A stretch of 63,224 nt of DNA, filler included, from Octopus bimaculoides (taxonomy: Eukaryota): assembly GCF_001194135.2 (NCBI RefSeq). It is 6 parts of 6 records of this genome, joined end to end, with 100 filler letters (N's around TTAATTAATTAA, not from the genome) between each part and the next. Parts side by side here need not be neighbours in the genome. Positions count along the whole stretch, not along the records: positions 60,495 to 63,224 come from NC_068986.1; 5 more parts are not named here. One strand, written 5' to 3'. The notes beneath the pieces are model-generated. The model did no database searches, was not told where the DNA came from, and was given only the letters and a program-made list of their open reading frames with translations. The translations under genes were made by a program, and so were the position numbers. Within the stretch, counting starts at the first letter, position 1, and the number at the start of each line of letters is the position of its first letter. Below, piece by piece: positions 60,844 to 60,935 of this stretch.

Positions 60844-60935
60844 TGTCGTAGCCTGTGAGGTAGTAGCAGCCATTTAGTTTACCAAGGAATGTGTTGATAC
60901 ATTGAGTAGCTCTTACTACCTCACAGCCTAGAACA
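60844..60935 (+). ncRNA. Candidate pre-miRNA hairpin with a let-7-type seed (not let-7 itself)
   Basis: 60853-60878 pairs with 60901-60926 over 26 positions (2 mismatches, 4 G.U), with a 22-nt loop and an interrupted lower stem reaching 60844/60935. The 5' arm from 60856 is UGAGGUAGUAGCAGCCAUUUAG. There is no expression evidence. Confidence 0.4.

What the first reader, a model, noticed from the sequence alone, without database searches (positions are those of the whole stretch)
60844..60935. Pre-miRNA-shaped hairpin carrying the let-7 5' end with a novel 3' half
Seen: hand pairing gives 13 consecutive Watson-Crick pairs (60853-60865 with 60914-60926). The stem extends to 26 positions with only 2 mismatches, has a 22-nt loop, and continues into a lower stem ending about 12 nt below 60856. 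A 5p product starting at 60856 (UGAGGUAGUAGCAGCCAUUUAG) gives a 70-nt precursor with a 22-nt 3p partner at 60904-60925. All four wobble positions are G.U on the plus strand and would be A/C mismatches on the minus strand, which favours an RNA structure over a decaying DNA palindrome. Established: let-7 begins UGAGGUAGUAG (seed GAGGUAG), Microprocessor needs about an 11-13 bp lower stem, and coleoid cephalopods have an expanded miRNA repertoire. Inference: this may be a lineage-specific miRNA that shares let-7 targets. Against: the nearest CNNC (60945-60948) is about 20 nt past the cut rather than the usual 16-18, and a tiny TA-flanked MITE is an alternative explanation.
Basis: partly seen in the sequence, partly recalled or inferred. 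Interest (0 to 1): 0.7.

Follow-up and report, generated by a model that had tools for sequence, protein, structure and literature searches.

The report
Palindromic hairpin with let-7 start
A 92-base imperfect DNA palindrome in repeat-rich non-coding DNA folds into a microRNA-precursor-shaped hairpin equally well on both strands and begins like let-7, but nothing testable here shows it is a working microRNA gene, and it is not a let-7 family member.

Summary
Positions 60844-60935 form a gapless imperfect palindrome with 42-nt arms, an 8-nt centre and 31 Watson-Crick pairs, including 13 perfect pairs at 60853-65/60914-26. It is the only strong non-microsatellite hairpin in the 2.7-kb piece. TGAGGTAGTAG, the first 11 nt of let-7, starts at 60856, about 12 nt above the base of the stem.

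- The minus strand folds as well or better (-40.2 vs -37.6 kcal/mol) and also starts its 5' arm with UGAGGUAGUA.
- Transition mismatches split 4 (G.U on +) to 3 (G.U on -), which is what a decaying DNA palindrome predicts.
- The Rfam let-7 model scores 17 bits on either strand, against a threshold of 53.5. Identity to let-7 stops at nt 11.
- UG and CNNC motifs are off-register.
- Duplex-end stability favours loading the 3' arm, not the let-7-like arm.

No eukaryotic genome or small-RNA data could be searched, so copy number, conservation and expression remain untested.

Best reading (about 0.5): a neutral, degenerating inverted repeat, either a solo palindrome or a Made1-like MITE remnant, that shares the let-7 prefix by coincidence and is at most a proto-miRNA. 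A genuine young miRNA remains possible (about 0.25-0.3).

The parts
60844..60935 (.). Whole imperfect, gapless DNA palindrome (92 nt). It forms a hairpin on either strand.
   Evidence: the repeat finder I1: arms 60844-60885 / 60894-60935, 42 nt, 74% complementary, 8 nt between them. Pair table. Folds.
60853..60865 (.). Left half of the perfect 13-bp core (CTGTGAGGTAGTA). It pairs with 60914-60926.
60914..60926 (.). Right half of the perfect 13-bp core (TACTACCTCACAG). Positions 60914-60923 are the exact complement of let-7 nt 1-10, and 60916-60923 (CTACCTCA) is a let-7 8-mer site.
60886..60893 (.). 8-nt centre of the palindrome (apical loop).
60856..60877 (+). Putative plus-strand 5p, UGAGGUAGUAGCAGCCAUUUAG. 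The first 11 nt equal let-7; 13 of 22 match overall.
   Evidence: A hypothetical product: no expression data.
60904..60925 (+). Putative plus-strand 3p, GAGUAGCUCUUACUACCUCACA, with a weakly paired 5' end.
   Evidence: Hypothetical.
60902..60923 (-). Putative minus-strand 5p, UGAGGUAGUAAGAGCUACUCAA. The first 10 nt equal let-7.
   Evidence: Hypothetical.
60854..60875 (-). Putative minus-strand 3p, AAAUGGCUGCUACUACCUCACA.
   Evidence: Hypothetical.
60945..60948 (+). Nearest CNNC (CTTC), 20 nt past the putative 3p end. The canonical distance is 16-18 nt.
60850..60854 (.). AGCCT, directly repeated at 60925-60929 on either side of GTGAGG...CCTCAC. It may be a 5-bp target-site duplication, or simply the lower stem with its C.C mismatch.
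   Evidence: Not statistically compelling, because the 5-mer is nearly self-complementary and 20 boundaries were tried.
60925..60929 (.). Second copy of the AGCCT direct repeat.

Best explanation
The feature is a degenerating 92-bp DNA inverted repeat in non-coding, microsatellite- and repeat-rich DNA. It arose either as a solo palindromic duplication or as the remnant of a very small Made1-like MITE.

Because it is a palindrome at the DNA level, either strand would fold into a pre-miRNA-shaped hairpin if transcribed. One arm carries the let-7 5' 11-mer, and I read that as coincidence rather than descent from let-7.

It is not a let-7 family gene. At most it is a proto-miRNA, meaning raw material that the Drosha/Dicer pathway could sample if the locus is transcribed. 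In that case the non-let-7 3' arm is the more likely strand to be loaded.

Shown: the palindrome, its two-strand symmetry and the lack of let-7 homology. Inferred: neutrality, and the DNA-level origin.
For: - **DNA-level symmetry.** The arms align without any gap from the base to an 8-nt centre. This is typical of DNA-level symmetry rather than an evolved RNA stem.
- **No strand preference in mismatches.** Transition mismatches are 4 G.U on + and 3 G.U on -. Inside the 26-position stem the split is 4:1, one-sided p = 0.19.
- **No strand preference in folding.** Energies are -37.6 (+) vs -40.2 (-) for the 92 nt, -31.5 vs -31.3 for the 74-nt core, -39.0 vs -42.8 for 121 nt, and both hairpins survive in a 281-nt context.
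- **The perfect core is not significant.** A 13-bp perfect run is not unexpected given 31 of 42 matches (p = 0.097).
- **No let-7 homology.** Rfam let-7 scores 17.0 bits on each strand vs a gathering score of 53.5, mir-84 scores 12.6 vs 60, and the best hit is a generic long-hairpin match to mir-624 (23.4 vs 100). Identity to let-7 is 11 of 11, then 2 of 11.
- **No cluster partners.** No mir-100 or mir-125 lies in the piece, although protostome let-7 genes normally sit in that cluster (PMC3384580).
- **Motifs off-register.** UG is at -12 and -16 rather than -14, CNNC is at +20, and UGU is only mid-loop.
- **Loading asymmetry.** The let-7-like arm has the stable duplex end.
- **Published annotation.** If the source is an octopus, the small-RNA-based annotation of 18 tissues lists a single 'Ovu-Let-7' among 164 genes (PMC9699675).
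- **Precedent.** Made1 is an 80-bp palindrome with 37-bp arms and a 6-bp centre, which forms hairpins from both strands (PMC1784062).
Against: - The let-7 11-mer sits in almost exactly the register a Microprocessor cut would expose, 12 nt above the basal junction. It has a 5' U, 20 of 22 duplex positions paired and a 70-nt precursor. For one family, 3 registers and 2 strands, that coincidence has a probability of about 1.4e-6 per hairpin.
- No second copy was found and no convincing target-site duplication, so the MITE origin is unproven.
- Within the 22-nt duplex the plus strand is the better paired of the two: 4 G.U against 1 A.C.
- Neutrality is inferred, not shown. Expression and conservation were not testable.
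Confidence: 0.5

Rival explanations
1. This is a genuine lineage-specific miRNA gene transcribed from the plus strand. Drosha cuts at 60855/60856 and 60925/60926, and Dicer yields UGAGGUAGUAGCAGCCAUUUAG (5p) and GAGUAGCUCUUACUACCUCACA (3p). The 5p shares the let-7 seed and therefore seed-matched targets. It would have been born from an inverted duplication, not from let-7.
For: - The geometry fits a canonical pri-miRNA: a 12-nt lower stem with 9 pairs, 20 of 22 duplex positions paired, an apical region of more than 8 nt, a 70-nt precursor and a 5' U.
- The structure is a strong outlier (z about -4).
- The 11-nt let-7 prefix is in register.
- Octopus is reported to have gained 90 novel miRNA families, and the authors say species-specific ones are under-counted (PMC9699675).
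- let-7 'sister' miRNAs that share only the 5' part exist in other phyla (my own knowledge: C. elegans miR-48/84/241).
Against: - There is no strand-specific structural signal.
- The let-7-like arm has the stable 5' end, so it would tend to be the passenger strand.
- Motifs are off-register.
- No paper in the library contains the sequence.
- The octopus annotation lists a single Let-7.
- There are no expression or conservation data.
Confidence: 0.25
2. This is one copy of a dispersed MITE family, a palindromic non-autonomous DNA transposon like human Made1. This is a sub-case of the best explanation with a specific origin. Its boundaries would be either 60851-60928 flanked by TA, or 60855-60924 flanked by AGCCT.
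For: - It is an 80-90-bp near-palindrome with a tiny centre, the same architecture as Made1 (37-bp arms plus 6 bp; PMC1784062).
- TA flanks and a 5-bp AGCCT direct repeat are present.
- The surroundings are repeat-rich.
Against: - Both candidate duplications are explained by the palindrome itself, because TA and AG(C/G)CT are self-complementary or nearly so.
- Pairing continues outside either boundary: 4 of the 6 positions 60844-60849 are Watson-Crick.
- There is no second copy in the piece.
- Copy number in the genome could not be tested.
Confidence: 0.2
3. The miRNA comes from the minus strand, or the locus is bidirectional, so that let-7-seed 5p species arise from both strands (UGAGGUAGUAAGAGCUACUCAA from the minus strand).
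For: - The minus strand folds at least as well (-40.2 and -42.8 kcal/mol).
- Its lower stem gains two G.U pairs (60847/932 and 60842/937).
- Its 5' arm starts with the let-7 10-mer.
- Made1/mir-548 loci are expressed from both strands.
Against: - The minus-strand upper stem has a 7x7 internal loop, so only about 15 of 22 duplex positions pair.
- There is no CNNC at +16-18; the nearest are at +3 and +6.
- There are no expression data.
Confidence: 0.07
4. This is a structured element inside a longer transcript (UTR, intron or lncRNA). Its right arm would be an extended let-7 binding site (TACTACCTCA, 60914-60923), masked by or competing with the let-7-like left arm. That would make it a let-7-responsive switch or sponge.
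For: The right arm is a perfect complement to let-7 nt 1-10 and includes the 8-mer CTACCTCA.
Against: This is pure inference. The site is an automatic consequence of the palindrome. There is no evidence of transcription, no coding exon nearby, and a 13-bp perfect stem would occlude the site.
Confidence: 0.04

Closest known systems
let-7 miRNA family (Rfam RF00027) and seed-sharing 'sister' miRNAs such as C. elegans mir-48/84/241 (mir-84 is Rfam RF00811)
   Same: The first 11 nt (plus strand) or 10 nt (minus strand) of the 5' arm match let-7, including the seed GAGGUAG. The prefix lies on the 5' arm of a hairpin at a plausible Drosha register.
   Different: Only 2 of the remaining 11 nt match. 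The covariance models score 17.0 bits (let-7, gathering score 53.5) and 12.6 bits (mir-84, gathering score 60), and let-7 scores the same on both strands. No mir-100 or mir-125 neighbours were seen (PMC3384580). The 5' end of the let-7-like arm is tightly paired. Expression is unknown.
hsa-mir-548 family, derived from Made1 MITEs (PMC1784062)
   Same: A short near-perfect DNA palindrome (Made1 is 80 bp, with 37-bp arms and a 6-bp centre; here 92 bp, with 42-nt arms and an 8-nt centre). Both form pre-miRNA-like hairpins from either strand.
   Different: Made1 has many copies, a known mariner parent (Hsmar1) and TA duplications. Here copy number is unknown, no parent element is known, the duplication is ambiguous, and the arms have already diverged to 74% complementarity.
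Sense/antisense miRNA loci (e.g. Drosophila mir-iab-4 / mir-iab-8; from my own knowledge)
   Same: Both DNA strands can fold into processable hairpins.
   Different: In those loci both strands are shown to be expressed and processed, and the two products have different seeds. Here both hypothetical 5p products would share one seed, because the core is a perfect palindrome.
Low-confidence, non-conserved human loci annotated with a let-7-type seed (miR-4500, miR-4458; from memory, not checked here)
   Same: Isolated hairpins that share the let-7 5' end but nothing else with let-7.
   Different: Those loci have at least some small-RNA reads behind them. This one has none available.

Membership tests
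LET-7 miRNA family | Seed GAGGUAG at nt 2-8 of the 5' arm product | tested here: met
   TGAGGTAGTAG lies at 60856-60866 (+), and TGAGGTAGTA is on the minus strand from 60923. The 5' end of any real product is unknown.
LET-7 miRNA family | Near-invariant 22-nt mature sequence (UGAGGUAGUAGGUUGUAUAGUU) | tested here: not met
   13 of 22 nt are identical on either strand, with nothing beyond nt 11 (+) or nt 10 (-) above chance. The consensus is also printed in the Rfam alignment.
LET-7 miRNA family | Precursor matches the family covariance model at or above the gathering score (53.5 bits) | tested here: not met
   17.0 bits, E = 0.27-0.37 even in a 101-141-nt search, and identical on both strands. 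Only the palindromic core aligns. There was no hit at E <= 10 in the 2.7-kb search.
LET-7 miRNA family | Linkage with mir-100 and/or mir-125, as is usual in protostomes (PMC3384580) | tested here: inconclusive
   Neither was found in 60495-63224. However, the piece has only 350 nt on one side and 2.3 kb on the other.
Canonical animal miRNA gene (MirGeneDB-type criteria) | Hairpin with at least 16 paired nt in a 20-26-nt duplex and a loop of at least 8 nt | tested here: met
   On the plus strand 20 of 22 positions pair (16 Watson-Crick plus 4 G.U), and the centre is 8 nt or the apical region 26 nt. On the minus strand about 15 of 22 pair.
Canonical animal miRNA gene (MirGeneDB-type criteria) | Lower stem of about 11-13 bp below the Drosha cut | tested here: met
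   60844-60855 is 12 positions, 9 of them paired on + and 10 on -.
Canonical animal miRNA gene (MirGeneDB-type criteria) | Processing motifs: basal UG at -14, apical UGU/GUG at the end of the 5p, CNNC at +16-18 | tested here: not met
   On the plus strand UG is at -16, -12 and -2, UGUGU is only at 60890-60894 in mid-loop, and CNNC is at +20. On the minus strand UG is at -12 and -2 and CNNC at +3 and +6. These motifs are helpful but not obligatory.
Canonical animal miRNA gene (MirGeneDB-type criteria) | Strand-specific RNA structure (sense strand folds better than antisense; G.U pairs only on the sense strand) | tested here: not met
   Energies are + -37.6 and - -40.2 kcal/mol. Transition mismatches split 4 G.U on + and 3 on -.
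Canonical animal miRNA gene (MirGeneDB-type criteria) | Reads from both arms with homogeneous 5' ends and 2-nt offsets | not testable with these tools
   No small-RNA read data are reachable.
Canonical animal miRNA gene (MirGeneDB-type criteria) | Conservation of the locus in related species | not testable with these tools
   No eukaryotic genome collection is available. The indirect routes were empty. The DNA scans of metagenome, prokaryote and viral collections gave only unrelated bacterial palindromes or nothing.
MITE (Made1-like palindromic element) | Terminal inverted repeats, small size, no coding capacity | tested here: met
   The arms are 42 nt and 74% complementary, with a 13-bp perfect core. 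No ORF is present.
MITE (Made1-like palindromic element) | Target-site duplication flanking the repeats | tested here: inconclusive
   TA flanks 60851-60928 and AGCCT flanks 60855-60924. Both are self-complementary or nearly so, and are therefore expected from the palindrome alone.
MITE (Made1-like palindromic element) | Many dispersed copies in the genome | not testable with these tools
   Only 2.7 kb of this genome is available, and it holds no second copy.

The most novel reading that the evidence does not exclude
A cephalopod-lineage miRNA was born de novo from a palindromic duplication and independently acquired the first 10-11 nt of let-7. Because the core is a perfect palindrome, it could deliver a let-7-seed small RNA from either strand, adding a second, differently regulated input to the let-7 target network (lin-41/TRIM71, lin-28 and others). 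This would be convergent seed capture rather than gene duplication.
Probability: 0.1. Interest if true: 0.6.

Novelty: new member of a known kind. Interest (0 to 1): 0.3.

Why it matters
If it were expressed and conserved, it would be a second let-7-seed miRNA in a lineage where the published annotation lists a single let-7 gene. It would also be a clean example of a new miRNA arising from a DNA palindrome and converging on one of the oldest animal seeds. That bears on how the reported coleoid miRNA expansion arose, since the authors state its source is unknown (PMC9699675).

As things stand, its main value is as a caution for the scan. A perfect pre-miRNA shape plus a famous seed is not evidence of a miRNA when the element is a DNA palindrome. 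Both strands look equally good, and G.U counting on one strand alone misleads.

A rough look-elsewhere estimate is about 7e-5 per hairpin for an in-register 11-mer match to any of about 48 conserved families. With 1e4-1e5 independent hairpins per genome (my assumption), a whole-genome scan would be expected to surface a few such coincidences.

Tried and rejected
- **Rfam, whole piece and narrow windows.** No family reached threshold. The let-7 and mir-84 hits are sub-threshold and symmetric between strands. Hits to mir-297, mir-466, mir-3149 and mir-1277 elsewhere in the piece lie on microsatellites and are spurious.
- **Literature search for the 13-16-mers of both putative 5p products.** It returned nothing relevant, only one unrelated tick paper.
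- **Supplements of the octopus miRNA paper.** They hold no sequences. CTACCTCA sites are attributed to 'Ovu-Let-7' in every passage shown.
- **Reaching the same or orthologous locus through proteins.**
  - Exact look-up of 10 ORFs from the piece found none in the collection.
  - Two composite six-frame queries had no hits: the hairpin flanks including the frame through the hairpin, and the SINE-like and right-hand regions.
  - Even the putative high-copy SINE frames found nothing, so these negatives say nothing about copy number.
- **DNA pattern scans for the two arms.** The metagenome scan gave 1 hit, the prokaryote genome scan 2 hits and the viral scan 0. All hits are unrelated bacterial palindromes at about the chance rate. 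The exact 21-mer of the 5p was absent from prokaryote genomes.
- **Taxon check.** Paper search for SINE-like strings found nothing.
- **Test for selective preservation of the 13-bp core.** Not significant, p = 0.097.
- **Other features.** No tRNA genes were found. There are no other inverted or direct repeats of note near the hairpin.

Full report
**1. What is there**

The piece 60495-63224 is AT-rich non-coding DNA, at about 32-43% GC outside the repeats. It starts and ends in (AT)n and carries several microsatellites. It has no tRNA genes and no credible ORFs.

Positions 60844-60935 form a gapless imperfect palindrome in which every pair obeys i + j = 121779. The arms are 42 nt (60844-60885 and 60894-60935), the centre is 8 nt, and complementarity is 74%. 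Of the 42 arm positions:
- 31 are Watson-Crick;
- 4 are G.U on the plus strand (60866/913, 60873/906, 60875/904, 60877/902);
- 3 are A.C on the plus strand and therefore G.U on the minus strand (60847/932, 60871/908, 60882/897);
- 4 are other mismatches.

**2. Is it more than chance?**

As a structure, yes.
- The 121-nt folds give z = -3.96 on the plus strand and z = -4.30 on the minus strand, with no shuffle as good.
- In a 92-nt sliding-window census of both strands, 1,030 non-repetitive windows average -14.4 +/- 5.4 kcal/mol. This hairpin reaches -36.0 (+) and -40.3 (-), and everything else at that level is microsatellite.
- The hairpin persists in a 281-nt context on both strands.
- The lower stem has 6 of 9 Watson-Crick pairs (p about 0.01) and the apical extension 6 of 8 (p about 0.004; both are my binomial arithmetic).

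The let-7 11-mer TGAGGTAGTAG occurs once, and none of 100 shuffles contained it. As an empirical null, I scanned for the two 11-nt arms separated by 30-60 nt. They occur once in the JGI metagenome collection, twice in 596 Gb of prokaryote genomes and never in the viral collection. All hits are unrelated bacterial palindromes, which is about the random expectation. So the palindrome itself is no accident. Palindromes are made by DNA-level processes, though, and the real question is whether the let-7 prefix on its arm means anything.

**3. Tests of the miRNA reading**

That count is correct but one-sided. The plus strand's A.C mismatches are G.U on the minus strand, giving 4 vs 3 overall and 4 vs 1 inside the 26-position stem (one-sided p = 0.19).

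Energetically the minus strand is equal or better: -40.2 vs -37.6 kcal/mol for the 92 nt, -31.3 vs -31.5 for the 74-nt core, and -42.8 vs -39.0 for 121 nt. The core is a perfect palindrome, so the minus-strand 5' arm also starts UGAGGUAGUA. This symmetry is what a decaying DNA palindrome predicts. There is no signal of selection on one RNA strand.

*(b) let-7 homology.* Identity to let-7 is 11 of 11 and then 2 of 11. Rfam's let-7 model gave no hit at E <= 10 in the 2.7-kb search. In a 101-141-nt search it scored 17.0 bits on each strand against a gathering score of 53.5, aligning only the palindromic core. The let-7 sister mir-84 scored 12.6 against 60. The top hit, mir-624 at 23.4 against 100, is a generic long-hairpin match.

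No mir-100 or mir-125 lies in the piece, whereas protostome let-7 genes normally sit in that cluster (PMC3384580). The piece is too short for this to be decisive.

*(c) Microprocessor features.* The geometry is good: a 12-nt lower stem, 20 of 22 duplex positions paired, a 70-nt precursor and a 5' U. The accessory motifs are off-register, with UG at -16 and -12, UGU only mid-loop, and CNNC at +20.

*(d) Strand loading.* The terminal 5 bp at the 5' end of the let-7-like arm are worth -5.3 kcal/mol. The 5' end of the opposite arm does not pair stably at all (0 kcal/mol), and this holds on both strands. By the established thermodynamic-asymmetry rule, the non-let-7 arm would be preferentially loaded. 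The 5' U of the 5p arm partly counters this. The prediction that the locus 'shares let-7 targets' is therefore weaker than the seed match suggests.

*(e) Selective preservation of the core.* A 13-long perfect run among 31 of 42 matches has p = 0.097, which is not significant.

**4. What could not be tested**

No eukaryotic genome or small-RNA data set is reachable with these tools.
- I tried to reach the locus or its orthologues through ORFs. The exact look-up of 10 ORFs found none.
- Two composite six-frame protein queries had no hits.
- The second query included frames from what I believe, from memory only, is the abundant octopus SINE (about 61010-61145 and 61860-61900), and it also found nothing. 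So these negatives carry no information about copy number.
- No paper in the library contains the candidate sequences.
- The octopus miRNA study reports 164 genes and 138 families, with 90 novel families and a single 'Ovu-Let-7'. It states that species-specific miRNAs are under-counted. Its supplements held here contain no sequences (PMC9699675).
- The cephalopod origin of the piece itself is unverified.

**5. Explanation**

*Most likely (about 0.5).* This is a neutral, degenerating inverted repeat whose arm shares the let-7 prefix by coincidence. It is either a solo palindromic duplication or the remnant of a tiny MITE of the Made1 type. Made1 is 80 bp, with 37-bp arms and a 6-bp centre, it forms hairpins from both strands, and it is the source of hsa-mir-548 (PMC1784062).

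The MITE sub-case (about 0.2) has only ambiguous support. There are TA flanks at 60851-60928, and an AGCCT direct repeat flanks 60855-60924. Both are self-complementary or nearly so, and are therefore expected from the palindrome alone.

*Main rival (about 0.25).* This is a genuine young miRNA from the plus strand. A minus-strand or bidirectional miRNA (about 0.07) and a structured let-7 site in a transcript (about 0.04) are minor rivals. A palindromic origin and miRNA function are not mutually exclusive. The dispute is about present function.

*On the coincidence.* For one family, three registers and two strands, the chance is about 1.4e-6 per hairpin. For about 48 conserved families it is about 7e-5. 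With 1e4-1e5 independent hairpins of this quality in a multi-gigabase genome (my assumption, not measured), a genome-wide scan should turn up roughly one to a few in-register 11-mer matches to some famous miRNA. The prior number of real, unannotated let-7-seed genes per genome is also well below one. The odds are therefore not far from even, and the symmetry tests in section 3 tilt them towards coincidence.

**6. Comparison with known families, and novelty**

If transcribed it would work like any canonical pre-miRNA. It fails the tested membership criteria for the LET-7 family (mature sequence and covariance model). It meets the structural criteria for 'a miRNA hairpin' but not the strand-specificity or motif criteria. 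It meets the architectural criteria for a Made1-like MITE, but the copy-number criterion is untested. Either way it is a new instance of a known kind.

**7. Verdict**

- Observation: confirmed.
- Interpretation: cannot be decided here, and its supporting arguments are weakened.
- Interest: 0.3.
- Decisive next steps: a genome-wide copy count, cross-species alignment, a MirGeneDB lookup, and mapping of public cephalopod small-RNA reads.

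Noticed in passing
window 60495-60504, 61489-61592, 61907-62086, 62578-62597, 63144-63224: The piece begins and ends in (AT)n. 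It holds (CA)n, (AT)n, (TATC)n/(CT)n/(TA)n and (CAAAA)4 arrays. It looks like a whole short assembly contig that broke at microsatellites.
   Followed up: partly
window 61510-61605, 62010-62132, 63070-63224: Sub-threshold Rfam hits to mir-297, mir-466, mir-3149, mir-1277 and mir-568 (up to 52.7 bits against gathering scores of 75-100) all lie on TA/CA microsatellites. They are artefacts of low-complexity sequence, not miRNA genes.
   Followed up: yes
window about 61010-61145 and 61860-61900: These segments resemble, from my memory only, the abundant tRNA-derived SINE of octopus genomes (e.g. ...CCCACTGCTTGGCAACTTAGGCAAGAGTCTTC...GTGAGTGGATTTGG......GCATGGCTGCAGTC...). The SINE-like head starts about 75 nt downstream of the hairpin, so the hairpin is not part of it. 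Searches by protein frames and paper text could not confirm the identification or the taxon.
   Followed up: partly
window 60850-60854 and 60925-60929: A 5-bp direct repeat, AGCCT, immediately flanks GTGAGG...CCTCAC (60855-60924). It would explain the C.C mismatch at 60852/60927 as the middle of a target-site duplication. It is not statistically compelling.
   Followed up: partly
window 60914-60923: The right arm is a perfect complement to let-7 nt 1-10 and includes the 8-mer site CTACCTCA at 60916-60923. Any transcript through the locus, in either orientation, would therefore carry both a let-7-like segment and a let-7 site.
   Followed up: no
window 62236-62325: An imperfect (GAT/GAC)n trinucleotide tract that reads as an Asp-rich or Ser-rich low-complexity ORF on the two strands. 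There is no sign that it is coding.
   Followed up: no
window 62595-62794: A very AT-rich stretch (23-27% GC) with poly-A runs. Its significance is unknown.
   Followed up: no
L001 334-408; L002 369-426; L003 1518-1580: Chance matches to the arm pattern in bacterial DNA. L001 (metagenome contig WNFL01144310.1) holds a 37-bp perfect palindrome followed by a T-run, which looks like a terminator. L002 (Hymenobacter metallilatus) and L003 (a Bacteroidota MAG) hold other palindromes. All are unrelated to the window beyond the 11-mers.
   Followed up: yes
window 60757-60774: A small 13-nt overlapping palindrome around AACTAGTT. Probably chance.
   Followed up: no
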